From positions 124,001-188,000 of IMG/VR virus record IMGVR_UViG_3300020380_000001: a stretch of DNA of 64,000 nt. One strand, 5' to 3'. Shown one piece after another: positions 40,695 through 46,433 of the stretch. Numbering within the stretch: the stretch's first letter is position 1; every line of letters starts with the position of its first letter. Under the pieces are notes generated by a model. That model did no database searches. It worked only from the letters and a program-made list of their open reading frames with translations, and was not told where the DNA came from. The position numbers and the translations under genes are program-made.

Positions 40695-41108
40695 CTACTG
40701 CGCAGGATTAGTGTACGCTTCACGTTTTCCGAACATGATACGTGTGCTATCTCTGCGCTCATAGAAACGTCCATTTTCTGGGTTGCGTTCGACCAAAATT
40801 GGTCCGTTAGATTTCATTTTAAATACATGTTTTTCACCGCTTTTGTTGCGTGTGATTTTGTATTCTTGATTAGTTGCATGTTTACCATTTCGGTCAGTTC
40901 TCGATGCGCGGTCTTCTTGAACCACTACATAAGAAAATCGTCCATGAGTAAACACGTCTATTACCGTGGCTGGCGTCTTGCCTTTCCACGTAACTAAGGT
41001 TGCCGGCTCGCCTACTTCGCGACCCTGTACAGGATCAGGTCTCGGCTGCATCGGTGCTTTCATAGCTACCCCCACACCCTTAACTACATTTACTCGAATA
41101 TTAGACAT
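40695..41108 (-). CDS. hypothetical protein
   Basis: 137-aa ORF, SD GGGG, sigma70-like promoter upstream. Confidence 0.75.
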   Translation of the reverse strand: MSNIRVNVVKGVGVAMKAPMQPRPDPVQGREVGEPATLVTWKGKTPATVIDVFTHGRFSYVVVQEDRASRTDRNGKHATNQEYKITRNKSGEKHVFKMKSNGPILVERNPENGRFYERRDSTRIMFGKREAYTNPAQ

Positions 41109-41269
41109 ACAAAAAATTTCCCCGTGTTGTGTTAATTACACCGAGATTATTATACAGAAACGGTCATAAGTCAACAAATTTCCTTAAAATAATTAAAAAA
41201 ACTTCGAAGACAAATTACGTAATGTTAACTTTGATTATTTGTAGTCATGAGCCAGCGCACCAAAAAAGT

Positions 41270-41411
41270 TCTTAAAAGTTTGTGTTTATTATTGCTTTTC
41301 ACAAACTTAATACTACCAAGTCCCTTATCGATCTTGTCCCAATGCTAGCTTTTACTGGGAGCGCCTACGGTGTGCGCTCGAATAATACAAAAGTAGCATC
41401 CCTGGACAACG
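41270..41411 (-). ncRNA. candidate stand-alone small RNA (long interrupted hairpin plus terminator)
   Basis: Promoter TTGCAA(41441-46)-17-TATATT(41418-23); nested stems TTGTCC/GGACAA, ATGCTA/TAGCAT, CTTTT/AAAAG, GAGCGC/GCGCTC (41334-41409); 9-bp terminator 41276-41308; no ORF. Confidence 0.55.
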
Positions 41412-41481
41412 TGATATAATATACGAAAGTATACTAGGCCTTGCAAGCGTTTTTTGCATATTTTACAAGGCCGTGTATAAA

Positions 41482-41964
41482 TTACACTCTACGTCTTATA
41501 GATAGTGTAAGGCCGCTCGGTTTTACTTTGTGCCACGCACGCACTGCCCAGTAATATAACTTAGCCATGCTGAAGTTTAAGTCCTCCAACATCTCTTTAA
41601 AGATTATATCAATCTGTTTAGTAGTAACCCATTCCATCTCTTTAGGATGCTCGTTTTTAATTTGAAGAAGAACGTCATGCACCAACGTAGCGCGCCACAG
41701 TTCTGGCCTTCCAATACTAGTGTCCCACTTACCATCCCAAGTACCAATAATCATTGGACCTATTCTAAATTTAGGCGATGCGCCATCCCATGCGTATCCT
41801 GGATATACAGTAAGCTCACCGGCTTTTGTTAAGGTTGCTAGAACTTTTGTACCATCGTCCGACATAACGTTGAGATCAGTATAAGGTTCTATATCGAAGC
41901 TCTCAGAGACAACTTCTGTGAGAGTGTAAAAGTAATTTTTAGACATACCACTTTCCTTAGTCAA
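41482..41964 (-). CDS. DUF1353-like protein
   Basis: PGYAWDGAS, ATLVHDVL, IDIIFKEML motifs; likely start 41946. Confidence 0.7.
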   Translation of the reverse strand: MTKESGMSKNYFYTLTEVVSESFDIEPYTDLNVMSDDGTKVLATLTKAGELTVYPGYAWDGASPKFRIGPMIIGTWDGKWDTSIGRPELWRATLVHDVLLQIKNEHPKEMEWVTTKQIDIIFKEMLEDLNFSMAKLYYWAVRAWHKVKPSGLTLSIRRRV

Positions 41965-42005
41965 GTACTAGTGATATTTACGTAGATATGAAAATTGGGG
42001 CGGTT

Positions 42006-42314
42006 TTAATCCCAACCCCAAGGATCCTCCCAGCGCTTGTTAGGTTTAAACTCGTAACAAGTAGTGGGGTCAATTGCCATTTTACGACACGCATTTCGTT
42101 CATAACAGCGGCGTGCACGATTGTCGTAATGTTTTACATAGCGCAAATAACCGCGCCAGTGTCCAATATCACGAGTGTAAGTTCTCATGTAAAACTTTTC
42201 GTCAAAGTCATAATACCAATAAGAATCGCGACTCTTATTAAGTTGACGTTCGATGTGGGCCTTTAGCTCACCTTTCGTTTTACAGTAATGGCGCTTACGC
42301 ACAGTTCTAGACAT
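42006..42314 (-). CDS. basic hypothetical protein
   Basis: 102 aa, SD GGAGG. Confidence 0.75.
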   Translation of the reverse strand: MSRTVRKRHYCKTKGELKAHIERQLNKSRDSYWYYDFDEKFYMRTYTRDIGHWRGYLRYVKHYDNRARRCYERNACRKMAIDPTTCYEFKPNKRWEDPWGWD

Positions 42315-42369
42315 TGTATCCTCCGTTGAAAATTAATTCAACGGAAAACTAGTGCTGGTCCTAACATAA

Positions 42370-42726
42370 TTATGCCTCTTTAGATGATTCCGGAACAGGG
42401 AAAGTAGCGTAAAACATGCCATCGCCTTTAGTCTGTAACTCAGAGCCAAGGTCGCTTAGCTTTACGTATAAACCCGATTCACCGGATATTGTGTACGCTG
42501 TAATAGTGCGCATTGTAATGCCAAAAAGTTGGCTGTGATATTCAAGAGTGCAACGTTGCGACCCTGTAATATCAGTTAACAGCACCGGTGCCATTTTCAC
42601 ATTAGCGTCCGCTCGTAGCGTAGTGCCAATCAAACCGTCTTCGATTACTACTGCCGGGAAGGCATTTAAGTCGTAATCAATTTGTACTTCTTGCTCTTCC
42701 GCTACCGTTGCTACCACTTCTGTCAT
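42370..42726 (-). CDS. hypothetical protein
   Basis: 118 aa; TAAATA at 42758. Confidence 0.7.
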   Translation of the reverse strand: MTEVVATVAEEQEVQIDYDLNAFPAVVIEDGLIGTTLRADANVKMAPVLLTDITGSQRCTLEYHSQLFGITMRTITAYTISGESGLYVKLSDLGSELQTKGDGMFYATFPVPESSKEA

Positions 42727-42796
42727 GTTAAATCCTACGTGTTTGTTAATGTATAGGTATTTAACGTGCGGTACTCAGTGTTGCGTCAAAAAGTAC

Positions 42797-43045
42797 TCAT
42801 TTTGTTCGCTTGCGTGATTTTTCGCGTACTGCTTTGTAATACGCCCTTTCATCTGCCTTGCTGGCAAATACGGTGCGGTAGCCAATGCCGCGAGTTGAAG
42901 CAGTCATTTTGCCGTTATAAATGGCAAGATTACGCGCTTTTGCGCGTAACCTGGCATATTGCTTTCTGCCTGCATGAGTCCTTATCTCTGGCACAACCGA
43001 CAATAATATTTGCCGGTTAAACCATTTTCGGATGCACCGCAGCAC
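42797..43045 (-). CDS. basic hypothetical protein
   Basis: 82-aa ORF. Confidence 0.55.
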   Translation of the reverse strand: MLRCIRKWFNRQILLSVVPEIRTHAGRKQYARLRAKARNLAIYNGKMTASTRGIGYRTVFASKADERAYYKAVREKSRKRTK

Positions 43046-43215
43046 TAGAACTCTCGTGAGCGATCAGTCAAAATGATAATCGCATCAGGGTCTGCAAGCT
43101 CTGGTTTAGACTCTCGGCCACTTACAAATTGCATCTCATTGACACGGCGCAAATAATCCGGCTTGTCTACATGAGAGTTAATTTCGCTTATTAAGTCGTC
43201 GAGTAATTGATCCAT
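43045..43215 (-). CDS. small hypothetical protein (56 aa)
   Basis: MDQLLDDLISEINSHV...SREF; below track cutoff. Confidence 0.5.
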   Translation of the reverse strand: MDQLLDDLISEINSHVDKPDYLRRVNEMQFVSGRESKPELADPDAIIILTDRSREF

Positions 43216-43234
43216 TTTGTCTAAACCTTTAAAG

Positions 43235-43435
43235 TGGTGCCCGGCTTCATTTTATGTATTCTATCCACTAACACCAAAGCCTCCAAGCGCTATGACTAGT
43301 ATTAGCAACTAACGCAAGCCCATCCCCGTAAGCACTATGTATTATATTATGGTCCACAGTCAATTCACTACTCGGGGTAGAGCGTGCTAAGCATTTAATG
43401 ATCGTCGTGGACGGGCAGTTGTAAACCCGCCGGGC
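43235..43435 (-). ncRNA. 201-nt tRNA-like ncRNA (acceptor stem plus ACCA)
   Basis: GCCCGGC/GCCGGGC 7-bp terminal stem then ACCA; own promoter TTGCAA(43476-81)-16-TACAAT(43454-59); several internal helices. Confidence 0.6.
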
Positions 43436-43488
43436 GTTGTTAATTAAGCCGTGATTGTAACAAACCAAATCACACTTGCAAGGTGTTT

Positions 43489-43719
43489 TTAGGAAATTTT
43501 GTATTTCAATATCTTGTCTAAGTGAGAACTCATTTGGTTATAAGCTTTGACACTAATGCCGTCGGTGTTACTGCCGATCGCATCGTCTAGCGCCTTTATT
43601 GCTAAGCCTAGCTCAACAGGCACACCAAGCTTTGTCGCTTGTGCTTGTCTTTTTGCTGCTAGCTCTGCAGCGACTTCTTCCGCGTGCTTGTCGTGCCAAT
43701 ATTGTTGTCCCGAACTCAT
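43489..43719 (-). CDS. hypothetical protein
   Basis: 76 aa, SD GGAG. Confidence 0.7.
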   Translation of the reverse strand: MSSGQQYWHDKHAEEVAAELAAKRQAQATKLGVPVELGLAIKALDDAIGSNTDGISVKAYNQMSSHLDKILKYKIS

Positions 43720-43723
43720 AAGT

Positions 43724-43999
43724 TCATTCTCCTATTATATCACTCACATTCAATGTTTTGACTCTACCACGTCTTTCGTAGAGTATGATCTCTACGCCTA
43801 TTTCGTGCAGTAATTTGACACACTCCAAATAGGCATCGCGCGTTAGGTTCTCACCATGTGCGCCTGAAATATACGCTGTCGTATCCGAAATATGCTGTAT
43901 TGTAAAAATACCCGTATACGGCTTACGTTCGTCATATCCGTCTGAATCCTCGTATACCCTAATTTGACTAACTAACCTACTTATGTGTGCACCGTACAT
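43724..43999 (-). CDS. hypothetical protein
   Basis: 91 aa; TAAATA at 44022. Confidence 0.65.
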   Translation of the reverse strand: MYGAHISRLVSQIRVYEDSDGYDERKPYTGIFTIQHISDTTAYISGAHGENLTRDAYLECVKLLHEIGVEIILYERRGRVKTLNVSDIIGE

Positions 44000-44031
44000 A
44001 AATCATCTCCTATTATAGAGATATTTACAGG

Positions 44032-44316
44032 TTACTCACTCGGGTTCCAAATCCAGAGCATTACTTTTTTGGAAGCTTTGTACTCAGTCCATCCTTTCGG
44101 TATGTCACCGACCCTGCCATTTTTACGCGCTTCGGATGTTGACTTTACCACCTTTAATTCTTTCAACAAGTTGGGTATCGGCATATCATCCACGAAGATA
44201 ACTTCTTCGTCACCGTACAAGATGTCGAGATCGTTTTGTGTCCATGGACTTGATCTTACTACTACATTCATTGATCCATGCGCCTGAAGTGTTTGGCTAA
44301 ACTGCGAGTCCTGCAC
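44032..44316 (-). CDS. hypothetical protein
   Basis: 94-aa track ORF; start uncertain. Confidence 0.55.
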   Translation of the reverse strand: MQDSQFSQTLQAHGSMNVVVRSSPWTQNDLDILYGDEEVIFVDDMPIPNLLKELKVVKSTSEARKNGRVGDIPKGWTEYKASKKVMLWIWNPSE

Positions 44317-44600
44317 TCTGACAGGTATCGTCTCAGTTTTGATACTTTTACGTGGAACTTGTTAGCGGCCTCGGAATCAGTACAGTCGTGTTCGTTAAGA
44401 TACTTAGCTGCTCTGCGTACTGCATTACAGTGACGTCTGTACTGTCGTGCCACTTCTTTTTCGGTGTGATTAAACTTTTCGGCAATGCTTTTTGAACACG
44501 TTACTACTACAGGATCAGAATCGTTTAAGATTGATATACCCGTTGCGCTCAATACCAGGCGTTCCATTTCCCTGTTTGCTTGGTAATATTTTCCTGGCAT
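44268..44600 (-). CDS. hypothetical protein (possible HTH at C-terminus)
   Basis: 110 aa, SD GGAGG; DSEAANKFHVKVSKLRRYL resembles an HTH. Confidence 0.65.
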   Translation of the reverse strand: MPGKYYQANREMERLVLSATGISILNDSDPVVVTCSKSIAEKFNHTEKEVARQYRRHCNAVRRAAKYLNEHDCTDSEAANKFHVKVSKLRRYLSECRTRSLAKHFRRMDQ

Positions 44601-44613
44601 ACATCCTCCGTGT

Positions 44614-44868
44614 TTACTTCACGCCCATTATGCCCTCGATTTCTTTCTTAGACATCATGACATATGTGTTGTCAATTACCTTGCACCATTTGCCGTTGAT
44701 TTTGGTAGCCACTTCAGTGCGATATTGGTTACAGCAAGGATCGTGACCATCAGGGAATCGCGCATTGAGGCTCACTTTTTCACGATCATGTGGATACGTC
44801 GAAGCGTGGTAAACCTCGCCTCGTTTAATCCCTAGTCTCGTGTCGTTCTTCAGAATCATTACTTCCAC
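44614..44868 (-). CDS. hypothetical protein
   Basis: 84-aa ORF. Confidence 0.65.
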   Translation of the reverse strand: MEVMILKNDTRLGIKRGEVYHASTYPHDREKVSLNARFPDGHDPCCNQYRTEVATKINGKWCKVIDNTYVMMSKKEIEGIMGVK

Positions 44869-45226
44869 TGGGTATTCCTTTTTCTAGAGCTTGAATTTCA
44901 CCGGTATCAGTGTCTAATACGTAGACAAATACACGGCAGTATGAACGTATTGTTGCGATGCGGCACTGTCTACGGTCTGACTGAGAAACTAGTTGCTCGC
45001 AGCCTGACAATGTGGTGTTAAATGCAATGCGGTCCTGGCCGCTCACATTAGTACAATCTTGTTCAGTAAATGGTTGGAATCGGGAACAACCGGTGATAAA
45101 CAGTAATGGGACTAACACACCTAATAGTTTTCGCATACTTCGTTGCTCCGTTATAAATAAGGCCCGGGCGCTTTGAGCAGAACAGACGGCCAGTGCTGTA
45201 TCTACCCATAACGCCCTTGAAGGCAT
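44825..45226 (-). CDS. putative lipoprotein
   Basis: Internal MRKLLGVLVPLLFITGC lipobox suggests a true start near 45136. Confidence 0.55.
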   Translation of the reverse strand: MPSRALWVDTALAVCSAQSARALFITEQRSMRKLLGVLVPLLFITGCSRFQPFTEQDCTNVSGQDRIAFNTTLSGCEQLVSQSDRRQCRIATIRSYCRVFVYVLDTDTGEIQALEKGIPSGSNDSEERHETRD

Positions 45227-45323
45227 AGAATCATCCCTCTATATGTTTTTTGCGCACGGCATACGCGCCGTGGTGGGATTTGCGCCCAAATGAAGCATGC
45301 CAACCAATTTAACTGGTTGAAAA

Positions 45324-45446
45324 GGGTGGAGAGTAAGGAATCGAACCAAATCCGCCGGCTTGGGTTTAATGAAAACTTGCTGTTAGAATACTAATACAGT
45401 ATTCGTTTCATTCGGGGCCGGAGTGCAACCATTACACTTCATCTCC
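45324..45446 (-). ncRNA. tRNA-like gene with structured insert in the anticodon loop (degenerate scaffold)
   Basis: D arm GTGT/GCAC, anticodon stem CCGGC/GCCGG, TTCGATT T loop, imperfect acceptor, ends ACCC; insert carries the 27-nt core at 45378-45404. Confidence 0.65.
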
Positions 45447-45466
45447 ATATTCGCTATTATACGTTT

Positions 45467-45703
45467 TTACTTGTTAGTGTCAAGTAGTTTTAGCAAATTT
45501 TTTAAAAATTCTGGATCTTGTTGTTGGACTGGCGCAGTAGTTGGAATTGGAACGGCGCGTACAAACTCGGGTTCTTTATTTCGTTTGCATGACATGACAC
45601 ATCCGCATGTCATATCAAAAGCAGATTCACCAAAACCGTGACTCACGATGTCTTCTACTTCAGTGACACAGTTGCAATTGGTGCATATTATTATTTCATT
45701 CAT
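45467..45703 (-). CDS. small Zn-ribbon-like protein
   Basis: CxxCxC...CGCxxxC. Confidence 0.6.
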   Translation of the reverse strand: MNEIIICTNCNCVTEVEDIVSHGFGESAFDMTCGCVMSCKRNKEPEFVRAVPIPTTAPVQQQDPEFLKNLLKLLDTNK

Positions 45704-45752
45704 TATAGTTGCTCATATAACAGATGGGCCAAAGGTATCGCGGATAGCAGGG

Positions 45753-46124
45753 CTAAAGGTACTCTATGTCTATTACCTTAGCACTAGGCACAGTGAACTC
45801 AGTCTCACGATCAGTTATATTACCAAAAATGATATCGTTTGGGTTGAACTCAAACGTTACCAGTATTTCTTCTTCTGCTAGGCCGCTATAATAGTCAAGC
45901 ACATAATCACGGTCAAGTGACATGTAAATGCCGTTACCGGGCATTCGCATCGTATCGCCTTTCTTTATATCAAGCACTATGCGATTGTTGGCGCCTGCTA
46001 CTACTTTGCCGTTTTCTATGGCCATGACTTTATAGCCGGTCATAGTTTGATTTCCGGCAATGTTTTCAGCCATGCTACGTAGTACAGCCGATACATCATC
46101 CTGAAAAAGTTCATCTAAAATCAT
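45753..46124 (-). CDS. late protein, possible ADP-ribosyltransferase fold
   Basis: GNGIYMS...YY...ETEF pattern; TAAATA at 46149. Confidence 0.45.
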   Translation of the reverse strand: MILDELFQDDVSAVLRSMAENIAGNQTMTGYKVMAIENGKVVAGANNRIVLDIKKGDTMRMPGNGIYMSLDRDYVLDYYSGLAEEEILVTFEFNPNDIIFGNITDRETEFTVPSAKVIDIEYL

Positions 46125-46175
46125 ACAAGTTCCCGTTAGTTGTTACACTATTTATATGATTTTAGTTGAACGCTT

Positions 46176-46433
46176 TCAATCCTGTGCGGGAAAGCGAACA
46201 GCAACCTGATTGCCATTTGTGTCAATACCATTGACAGACCAGGTTTTGTTAATATGATTTTGACGCACCATGGCAGTCAATGTCACAGATTCACCAGTTG
46301 TGAACTCCACGAGCATCTTACACATATGGGTGTCAACAAATTGCAGATCATCAAAGTCCACAGATTCGACAACGCGGGTGTCATACCCGCGATATCGTTT
46401 ACTAAACCATTTGAGTGTTATTACTTCCATCAA
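46176..46433 (-). CDS. hypothetical protein
   Basis: 85 aa. Confidence 0.65.
   Translation of the reverse strand: MMEVITLKWFSKRYRGYDTRVVESVDFDDLQFVDTHMCKMLVEFTTGESVTLTAMVRQNHINKTWSVNGIDTNGNQVAVRFPAQD

What the first reader, a model, noticed from the sequence alone, without database searches (positions are those of the whole stretch)
43235..43435. 201-nt RNA with a perfect tRNA acceptor stem and ACCA, its own promoter and a pseudoknotted core
Seen: GCCCGGC...GCCGGGC-ACCA termini; D-like GGGU/GCCC hairpin; GUCCAC/GUGGAC helix; CUAC/GUAG hairpin whose CCCCG segment is complementary to a downstream CGGGG; AGCAC/GUGCU; sigma70 promoter with TGn-TACAAT upstream. There is no canonical T loop, no G3-U70 and no tag ORF, so it is not a normal tmRNA. 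Inference: a tRNA-mimic ncRNA matured by RNase P-like processing.
Basis: partly seen in the sequence, partly recalled or inferred. Interest (0 to 1): 0.7.

Follow-up and report, generated by a model that had tools for sequence, protein, structure and literature searches.

The report
Orphan tRNA-ended small RNA in jumbo phage
A conserved 273-base non-coding gap in an uncultured 306-kb marine phage probably encodes a 201-nt RNA whose paired ends and CCA tail copy a tRNA's amino-acid arm, but it has no T arm or anticodon, no relatives outside one phage species group, and its processing and function are unproven.

Summary
They fill a 273-nt gap between two small minus-strand ORFs of a 306.5-kb T4-polymerase-type marine jumbo phage.

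The gap is non-coding: a 1-nt indel and a new stop break its only ORF in relatives. It is under purifying selection: 5.5% divergence, against roughly 20% at synonymous sites next door.

The layout matches the phage's real tRNAs: same strand, encoded CCA, and the next gene's ribosome site directly behind. Two deep metatranscriptomes hold, across 5.5 kb, only contigs lying wholly inside the RNA.

Against the reading:
- No Rfam or ARAGORN match, even at E<=10.
- No T arm, no G3-U70, no conserved tag, so it is not a tRNA or tmRNA.
- No compensatory covariation; only two haplotypes exist.
- Folding z-scores are weak (-2.0, -1.6, and -0.7 with flanks).
- Other RNA-seq contigs cross both proposed ends.
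- No homolog in more distant phages.

Verdict: a plausible new tRNA-end-mimicking stable RNA. Its nearest analogues are the T4 species 1 and 2 RNAs, whose function is also unknown. Confidence about 0.45. A structured mRNA leader is the main rival.

The parts
43454..43481 (-). Sigma-70-like promoter: TTGCAA, 16-nt spacer, extended -10 TG-n-TACAAT. Predicted start is near 43445-43447.
   Evidence: 9 of 12 matches, TG present. Identical in all relatives. Consensus match only; not statistically enriched.
43436..43447 (-). Predicted 5' leader of about 10-12 nt (..AAUUAACAAC) that RNase P would remove.
   Evidence: Inferred from the promoter position. TAATTAACA also follows the -10 box of another promoter-like site at 41130-41138.
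43235..43435 (-). Candidate mature 201-nt RNA.
43429..43435 (-). 5' strand of the terminal (acceptor-like) helix, GCCCGGC (RNA 1-7).
   Evidence: Invariant in relatives.
43239..43245 (-). 3' strand of the terminal helix, GCCGGGC (RNA 191-197).
   Evidence: Invariant.
43235..43238 (-). ACCA: discriminator-like A plus an encoded CCA (RNA 198-201).
   Evidence: All 7 tRNAs of the window also encode CCA.
43413..43428 (-). Hairpin in the D-arm position (RNA 8-23): GGGU/GCCC stem with loop UUACAACU. It can stack coaxially on the terminal helix to give an 11-bp stack.
   Evidence: The stacking is inferred.
43407..43412 (-). 5' strand of the long-range helix P2 (RNA 24-29, GUCCAC).
   Evidence: Pairs with 168-173 in every fold.
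43263..43268 (-). 3' strand of P2 (RNA 168-173, GUGGAU).
   Evidence: Invariant.
43389..43400 (-). 5' strand of helix P3 (RNA 36-47).
   Evidence: C45U keeps the pair with G156 as a wobble.
43272..43282 (-). 3' strand of helix P3 (RNA 154-164).
   Evidence: G162A turns U38-G into U38-A.
43316..43388 (-). Core (RNA 48-120) holding the competing or pseudoknot-capable pairings AGCAC/GUGCU, GCUC/GGGC, CUAC/GUAG and CCCCG/CGGGG. Eight of the 11 variable sites lie here.
   Evidence: The topology is unresolved.
43287..43315 (-). Invariant hairpin (RNA 121-149). Positions 126-134 are complementary (8 bp with one bulge) to the loop of the D-position hairpin.
   Evidence: The loop-loop contact was read from the sequence and is untested.
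43246..43262 (-). 17-nt A/U-rich unpaired segment (RNA 174-190) where a tRNA or tmRNA would have its 17-nt T arm.
43489..43719 (-). Upstream ORF P0001 (76 aa, no family).
43045..43215 (-). Downstream ORF P0002 (56 aa, no family). Its AGG ribosome site and ATG follow the CCA by 19 nt.

Best explanation
The gap encodes a phage small RNA of about 201 nt with the overall plan of a tmRNA or tRNA but without their working parts. Its features are:
- a 7-bp G/C helix joining the two ends, followed by ACCA;
- a hairpin in the D-arm position;
- a long helix (P2/P3) in the anticodon-arm position that carries a branched insert of about 105 nt;
- an unpaired 17-mer in place of the T arm.

Proposed life cycle (inferred):
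- Host RNA polymerase transcribes it from its own promoter and also by read-through from upstream genes.
- Host RNase P cuts about 10 nt after the start, guided by the terminal helix stacked on the first hairpin and by the 3' RCCA.
- Host 3' nucleases trim back to the encoded CCA. This also releases the mRNA of the next gene.
- The RNA then accumulates as a stable species.

With no anticodon arm, T loop or tag it cannot decode. The most likely role is to present a tRNA 3' end to a host or phage factor that reads acceptor ends, as a decoy, sponge or substrate. This would be analogous to the still unexplained species 1 and 2 RNAs of the T4 tRNA cluster.
For: Non-coding:
- Gene callers leave the gap empty in every relative.
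- The only ORF (66 aa, TTG start) is frameshifted by a G-run indel.
- That ORF also gains a UGA through G162A in the other haplotype.

Constrained:
- The RNA shows 10 substitutions plus 1 indel in 201 nt (5.5%).
- The first 44 nt are invariant.
- The last 83 nt carry 2 changes.
- The promoter and leader show 0 changes in 53 nt.
- By comparison, P0001 differs by 7.4% and the next ORF by 13%.
- One haplotype has 9 changes in the 171 nt of P0002, a protein whose sequence is identical in every relative fetched, so the changes are presumed synonymous. The adjacent RNA 3' part of that haplotype is unchanged.

Structure-compatible change:
- All 4 substitutions that fall in candidate helices are transitions that keep a pair: U38-G162 to U-A, C45-G156 to U-G, G53-C118 to G-U, and C50-G103 to U-G.
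- The other 6 substitutions lie in unpaired stretches, and the G109 indel shortens the CCCCG/CGGGG pairing from 5 to 4 bp.

Same layout as the tRNAs:
- All 23 tRNAs lie on this strand, starting 5.5 kb upstream.
- All 7 tRNAs in the window encode CCA and are wedged between ORFs, with the next ribosome site right behind.

Statistics:
- An all-G/C 7-bp helix plus NCCA is expected about 0.04 times per window (hand calculation).

Expression:
- Metatranscriptomes X27 and X28 (two samples, about 1.1 billion bases each) hold only contigs 43261-43414 and 43246-43404 within 40800-46300.
- Both contigs lie inside the RNA.

Precedent:
- RNase P is known to cut non-tRNA phage RNAs (M3 RNA, C4 RNA) and uses the RCCA contact (PMC11143913).
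Against: - No family match in Rfam, even at E<=10 on the RNA alone, and none by ARAGORN.
- No T loop, so the usual contact with the RNase P specificity domain is missing.
- Folding energy is barely better than shuffles (z -2.0 and -1.6), against -4.6 for T4 rnaC.
- With flanks the best fold pairs CCGGC with a GCCGG inside P0002 instead (z -0.7).
- No compensatory double change. Only two haplotypes plus recombinants exist.
- RNA-seq contigs of X18/X19, X20 and X25/X26 cross both proposed ends.
- In X25/X26 the depth is lower than on the neighbouring genes.
- The runs were found using the RNA itself as bait, so X27/X28 are a biased sample.
- No homolog in the 46%-polymerase relative or in four GenBank jumbo phages.
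- No partner gene (SmpB, CCA-adding enzyme, Ro, RtcB, Rnl1) in the phage.
Confidence: 0.45

Rival explanations
1. The region is a structured 5' leader of the mRNA for P0002 and the genes behind it, acting as a stabiliser or translational control element. It stays attached to the message, and the ACCA is merely the linker before the ribosome site.
For: - There is no terminator between the RNA and P0002; the ATG follows 19 nt later.
- Contigs of X20 and X25/X26 run from the RNA into P0002.
- A sister promoter-like site with the same TAATTAACA start region leads straight into an ORF.
- With flanks, the fold involves P0002 sequence.
Against: - X27 and X28 contigs stop inside the RNA, and neither run has a contig on P0002.
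- The phage's true tRNAs have the same 'CCA then ribosome site' layout and are certainly cut out.
- A G/C terminal helix plus encoded CCA is unexplained by a leader role.
Confidence: 0.25
2. It is a decayed descendant of a tRNA- or tmRNA-type gene. It survives only as an RNase P 'punctuation' signal that cuts the polycistronic transcript, and the excised piece has no role of its own.
For: - tmRNA-like order of elements: end helix, hairpin, long helix with insert, then exactly 17 nt where the T arm would be.
- The position at the end of the tRNA region.
- The weak thermodynamic signal.
Against: - Sequence constraint extends over the whole 201 nt, including the invariant 121-149 hairpin, not only the ends.
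- It has its own promoter-like site, which a mere cutting signal would not need.
- No residual similarity to tRNA or tmRNA models.
Confidence: 0.13
3. The terminal helix and the CCA are coincidental. The gap is conserved for another reason, such as the promoter and regulatory DNA sites, or simply too little divergence time.
For: - Perfect 7-bp helices followed by NCCA are common by chance, about 40 per window (hand calculation).
- The GCCCGGC heptamer is over-represented in the window.
- z-scores are marginal.
- There are only two haplotypes.
Against: - All-G/C helices of this kind are expected about 0.04 times per window.
- Divergence is about 4-fold below the neighbouring synonymous rate.
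- The helix brackets almost exactly the space between the predicted start and the next ribosome site.
- RNA-only contigs occur in X27/X28.
Confidence: 0.13
4. The gap encodes the 66-aa protein read from TTG 43468 to 43268.
For: The frame is open in the window's haplotype.
Against: - The start is TTG with no ribosome site, and it lies within the promoter.
- The 1-nt G-run indel shifts the frame.
- G162A adds a stop in the commoner haplotype.
- No gene was called there on any contig.
Confidence: 0.02

Closest known systems
Bacteriophage T4 species 1 and species 2 RNAs (rnaC, rnaD)
   Same: - Small stable RNAs encoded on the tRNA strand at the end of a phage tRNA region.
- rnaC pairs its ends, and rnaD ends in CACCA.
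- Their function is still unknown (PMC3014915, PMC9697503).
- The host phage carries a T4-type DNA polymerase.
   Different: - No sequence or model similarity: R1 finds nothing in the T4 region.
- rnaC keeps a canonical T arm (CCGGG-UUCGAAU-CCCGG); this RNA has none.
- The T4 RNAs lie head to tail with tRNA-Arg in one precursor, whereas this RNA has its own promoter-like site and sits 5.5 kb from the nearest tRNA.
- This RNA is longer (201 nt against 139 and 119 nt).
tmRNA (SsrA)
   Same: - The same order of elements: a 7-bp acceptor helix closing the molecule, a long helix in the anticodon-arm position carrying a large and possibly pseudoknotted insert, and a 3' ACCA.
- tmRNA is also matured by RNase P.
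   Different: - No T arm and no G3-U70.
- No conserved tag frame: the only Ala-initiated frame (121-168) changes length through G162A.
- No Rfam or ARAGORN match.
- No SmpB gene in the phage.
- About half the usual size.
Non-tRNA RNase P substrates of phages (P1/P7 C4 antisense RNA, phi80 M3 RNA)
   Same: Short phage RNAs released from longer transcripts by RNase P, through a helix plus a 3' RCCA-type end (PMC11143913).
   Different: Those RNAs are smaller. C4 acts by antisense pairing within its own operon; no target complementarity was looked for or shown here. There is no sequence relationship.
Bacterial and phage Y-like RNAs (YrlA)
   Same: Non-coding RNAs of about 100-200 nt that mimic tRNA (PMC4201824).
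   Different: - YrlA carries its tRNA-like module (with a T arm) at the far end from the paired termini.
- YrlA works with Ro/Rsr, and there is no TROVE gene in this phage.
- No Rfam match.
T-arm-lacking mitochondrial tRNAs
   Same: An acceptor helix plus a D-type hairpin, with an unpaired replacement loop instead of the T arm (from general knowledge).
   Different: Those retain a normal anticodon arm and decode. This RNA has a 138-nt insert there.

Membership tests
tRNA (Rfam RF00005) | Cloverleaf with a T arm (GTTCRANYC loop) and an anticodon arm, scoring above the model threshold. | tested here: not met
   Seven tRNAs were found elsewhere in the window, but nothing here at gathering threshold or at E<=10. 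ARAGORN finds none.
tRNA (Rfam RF00005) | 7-bp acceptor helix, single discriminator base, 3' CCA. | tested here: met
   GCCCGGC/GCCGGGC plus ACCA. This is the same encoded CCA as in the phage's own tRNAs.
tmRNA | tRNA-like domain with a T arm and the G3-U70 alanine identity pair. | tested here: not met
   Pair 3-70 is C-G. A 17-nt unpaired stretch stands in place of the T arm. There is no tmRNA model match.
tmRNA | A conserved tag reading frame after a pseudoknot. | tested here: not met
   The frame GCG121..UAG166 is cut short by G162A (UGG to UGA) in relatives, and upstream frames are shifted by the G-run indel.
tmRNA | The SmpB partner protein. | tested here: not met
   No PF01668 match in the 306.5-kb phage genome. 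A host SmpB cannot be excluded.
T4 species 1 / species 2 RNA | Sequence or structure homology to rnaC or rnaD. | tested here: not met
   Model R1 finds nothing in T4 69000-74000. rnaC has a T arm and this RNA does not.
T4 species 1 / species 2 RNA | A stable, processed small RNA from a phage tRNA region. | tested here: inconclusive
   It lies on the tRNA strand at the edge of the tRNA region. X27/X28 give RNA-only contigs, but other runs give contigs that cross both ends.
RNase P non-tRNA substrates | A helix ending in a 3' RCCA with a single-stranded 5' leader. | tested here: met
   A 7-bp helix (11 bp if stacked on the first hairpin), ACCA, and a predicted leader of about 10 nt.
RNase P non-tRNA substrates | Actual cleavage by RNase P at position +1. 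| not testable with these tools
   This needs an in vitro cleavage assay or read-end mapping. Only assembled contigs were available.
YrlA / Y RNA | An Ro (TROVE) partner and a match to the Y RNA model. | tested here: not met
   No PF05731 match in the phage. No Rfam match.

The most novel reading that the evidence does not exclude
This is the first example of a phage-made 'acceptor-end decoy': a T-arm-less RNA that shows only the CCA-bearing arm of a tRNA. It is matured by host RNase P and either soaks up or is modified by a factor that reads tRNA 3' ends, such as a defence toxin that targets the CCA end, an aminoacyl-tRNA synthetase, or EF-Tu. It would therefore define a new functional class alongside phage tRNAs.
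Probability: 0.15. Interest if true: 0.75.

Novelty: new variant of a known kind. Interest (0 to 1): 0.48.

Why it matters
Phages carry tRNAs partly to survive host attacks on the tRNA pool. The tRNA-cluster RNAs of T4 have remained unexplained for 50 years. A second, unrelated phage RNA that keeps only the acceptor helix and CCA would point to the 3' end itself as the functional part of such RNAs. It would also offer a small, testable model for what RNase P, CCA-end enzymes or defence nucleases need in order to recognise a tRNA. If it is only an mRNA leader, it is an ordinary feature of a compact phage genome.

Tried and rejected
- Rfam at gathering threshold and at E<=10, on 701 nt and on the RNA alone: only noise (Ref66 at 18.9 bits, a CRISPR repeat model).
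- ARAGORN for tRNA and tmRNA: nothing here.
- A re-run of ARAGORN with relaxed and intron options failed because the script machine was lost. The planned genome-wide count of helix-plus-CCA candidates and a scan for antisense targets could not be run either.
- blastn against 50,697 phage records: no match.
- Searches with the flanking proteins in IMG/VR, in the 5.8-billion-protein set and in JGI metagenomes: only relatives at 89% identity or more, giving two RNA haplotypes plus recombinants.
- Exact 23-mer scan of IMG/VR: only the same relative.
- Covariance model R1 on the phage's own genome, on a 213-kb relative with 46% polymerase identity and three shorter relative contigs of 26-37 kb, on Vibrio phage 2.275.O, Atu_ph07, SCTP-2 and Phosso, on the T4 tRNA region, and on the rest of this phage's tRNA cluster: only a tRNA-sized match, a terminator and noise.
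- Partner genes in the phage (SmpB, CCA-adding enzyme, Ro/TROVE, RtcB, T4 Rnl1): none. The Rnl1 control did not ring in any genome, so that negative result carries no weight.
- Pfam on ten neighbouring ORFs: nothing informative.
- The shared TAACAAC leader with tRNA-Leu(UAG): rejected as a processing signal. In the tRNA-Leu case it is the stop codon of the upstream ORF plus 4 nt.
- tmRNA tag reading: rejected (see the membership test).
- The 66-aa ORF: rejected because of the indel.
- The two neighbouring gaps, 41109-41481 and 45227-45466, were read for similar RNAs. They have no CCA-ended helix and no Rfam match of note.

Full report
WHAT IS THERE

The feature lies on the minus strand. Read 5' to 3' it runs from window 43435 to 43235, 201 nt. 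In RNA numbering, position p equals window 43436-p.

- GCCCGGC (1-7) pairs perfectly with GCCGGGC (191-197), followed by ACCA.
- GGGU/GCCC (8-11/20-23) forms a hairpin immediately after the terminal helix.
- GUCCAC lies at 24-29.
- CUAC/GUAG, CCCCG/CGGGG and AGCAC/GUGCU are present.
- A TTGCAA-16-TG-n-TACAAT promoter-like site lies at 43481-43454.
- There is no T loop, and pair 3-70 is C-G.

The RNA fills a 273-nt gap between two small minus-strand ORFs: 43489-43719 (P0001, 76 aa) and 43045-43215 (P0002, 56 aa). The predicted start lies about 10 nt before G1. The ATG of P0002 follows the CCA by 19 nt.

GENOME CONTEXT

- The window is bases 124001-188000 of a 306.5-kb IMG/VR virus record with direct terminal repeats.
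- The DNA polymerase is of the T4 gp43 type. It is about 40% identical to those of Atu_ph07, Vibrio phage 2.275.O and the RaK2-like jumbo phages.
- Sequencing runs that hold the locus are marine.
- ARAGORN finds 23 tRNAs, all on the minus strand, between genome positions 172956 and 197011.
- The RNA lies at genome positions 167235-167435, 5.5 kb downstream of the last tRNA on the same strand.
- All seven tRNAs in the window encode their CCA. They are wedged between ORFs, with the next gene's ribosome site directly behind. The candidate RNA has the same layout.

IS IT MORE THAN CHANCE?

These are hand calculations from 43.4% GC.
- A perfect 7-bp helix followed by NCCA at 60-400 nt spacing is expected about 40 times per window, so that alone is nothing.
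- An all-G/C helix of that kind is expected about 0.04 times.
- The heptamer is itself over-represented (9 copies against 2.8 expected), but only here do two copies face each other.
- The promoter is a consensus-level match that is not enriched over shuffles.

CODING OR NOT?

The gap is not protein-coding.
- It holds one ORF (66 aa, TTG start).
- In the commoner haplotype that ORF is frameshifted by a 1-nt deletion in the G run 109-112 and gains a UGA through G162A.
- No gene was called in the gap on any of the contigs fetched.

CONSERVATION

- Every search for relatives returned the same species-level cluster: two haplotypes plus recombinants.
- Between the haplotypes the RNA differs at 10 positions plus the indel, which is 5.5%. 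The first 44 nt are invariant, and the last 83 nt carry two changes.
- The 53 nt of promoter and leader are invariant.
- P0001 differs by 7.4% and the ORF upstream of it by about 13%.
- A third haplotype, seen in run X20, has 9 substitutions in the 171 nt of P0002, whose protein is identical in every relative fetched, so they are presumed synonymous. It has none in the adjacent 79 nt of the RNA.
- The non-coding sequence therefore evolves several-fold more slowly than nearby synonymous sites. It is functional as sequence.

STRUCTURE

All folds agree on an outer frame:
- the terminal helix;
- the 8-23 hairpin;
- P2 (24-29/168-173);
- P3 (36-47/154-164);
- an invariant hairpin at 121-149;
- a 17-nt unpaired stretch at 174-190, exactly where a tRNA or tmRNA has its 17-nt T arm.

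The order of elements is that of a tmRNA. Other points:
- The four substitutions that fall in candidate helices are all transitions that keep a pair as a wobble or a Watson-Crick pair. The other six substitutions fall in unpaired stretches.
- This pattern is compatible with the structure but is not covariation. No pair changes on both sides.
- The core 48-120 can be drawn nested or pseudoknotted, and the data cannot decide between them.
- From the sequence I note that loop 12-19 is complementary, with one bulge, to positions 126-134 of the invariant hairpin. This could give a tRNA-elbow-like contact. It is untested.

The thermodynamic support is weak: z is -2.0 and -1.6 for the two haplotypes. 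With flanks the best fold uses a GCCGG inside P0002 instead, with z -0.7. T4 rnaC gives -4.6.

EXPRESSION

Only assembled contigs of public runs could be laid on the locus.
- In two deep metatranscriptomes from one study (X27 and X28), the only contigs within 40800-46300 are 43261-43414 and 43246-43404. Both lie wholly inside the RNA, and both carry exactly the known haplotype differences. This is what a stable RNA outlasting its neighbours' mRNAs would give.
- These runs were found by searching with the RNA itself, so the sample is biased.
- In X18/X19, X20 and X25/X26 the contigs cross the 5' end, the 3' end or both.
- In X25/X26 the depth over the RNA (7-8) is below that of the neighbouring genes (19-57). 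Read-through transcripts, or DNA carry-over, therefore exist.
- No ends were mapped.

KNOWN FAMILIES

- Rfam gives nothing, even at E<=10 on the RNA alone. ARAGORN gives nothing.
- It fails the defining tests for tRNA: no T arm and no anticodon arm.
- It fails those for tmRNA: no T arm, no G3-U70, no conserved tag, and no SmpB gene in the phage.
- It fails those for Y-like RNA: no Ro gene.
- The closest analogues are the T4 species 1 and 2 RNAs. These are stable RNAs at the end of the T4 tRNA cluster whose function is still unknown (PMC3014915, PMC9697503). There is no homology, and rnaC keeps a T arm.
- RNase P is known to release other non-tRNA phage RNAs through a helix plus RCCA (PMC11143913). 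The features needed for that are present here.

DISTANT HOMOLOGS

- A covariance model built from the five sequences found only itself in the phage's own genome.
- It found nothing credible in a 213-kb relative with 46% polymerase identity.
- The same held for four GenBank jumbo phages. The best hit there is a terminator between tail genes.
- It found nothing in the rest of this phage's tRNA cluster or in the T4 tRNA region.
- The RNA is an orphan of one phage species group.

VERDICT

- Best reading, about 0.45: a processed tRNA-end-mimicking stable RNA with a tmRNA-like plan that lacks the T arm, anticodon and tag. It would be matured like the phage's tRNAs.
- Main rival, about 0.25: a structured leader of the P0002 message.
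- Smaller shares go to a relic kept only as a cutting signal and to coincidence.
- The function is inferred only: an acceptor-end decoy or substrate.

The script machine was lost. Because of that, the genome-wide statistics and a descriptor scan of other phages could not be run.

Noticed in passing
Own genome 189501-189597, minus strand (L029 1501-1597); outside the window: ARAGORN calls a 97-nt 'tRNA-Stop' with anticodon UUA. It has a good T arm, a 7-bp acceptor helix (ACUAGGU/ACCUGGU) and ACCA. Rfam's tRNA model does not reach threshold on it. It may be an ochre suppressor or a second odd tRNA-like RNA.
   Followed up: partly
Own genome 194154-196658 (L029): Several tRNAs are unusually long for their class by ARAGORN: Asn 92 nt, Glu 85 nt, Lys 85 nt. 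Rfam also finds three tRNAs that ARAGORN misses (L029 1899-1970, 3057-3132, 8762-8833).
   Followed up: no
Window 41109-41481, minus strand: This is a 373-nt gap with two promoter-like sites (TTGCAA-17-TATATT and TTGACT-17-TATAAT). Between them lies a long imperfect hairpin (UUGUCCAGGGAUGCUA ... UAGCAUUGGGACAA), possibly another small RNA. A metatranscriptome contig covers 41347-41544.
   Followed up: partly
Window 45227-45466, minus strand: This is a 240-nt gap containing a T-loop-like GGTTCGATTCC and a GGG-CGCAAAU-CCC hairpin followed by ACCA. No tRNA is called and Rfam gives only noise. The fold z-score is -1.9.
   Followed up: partly
Window 43438-43446 and 41130-41138, minus strand: The 9-mer TAATTAACA follows the -10 box at both promoter-like sites. 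These are its only two copies in the window (1.06 expected). It may be a shared start region of this phage's early promoters.
   Followed up: partly
Whole window: The heptamer GCCCGGC/GCCGGGC occurs 9 times against 2.8 expected. None of 100 shuffles reaches 9. The reason is unknown.
   Followed up: no
Relatives L021-L023, L027, L028: Near-identical phage genomes of 307-313 kb recur in Tara Oceans and JGI marine assemblies. One copy of the P0001 protein is filed in NCBI under a Sphingobium MAG, which is probably a binning error.
   Followed up: no
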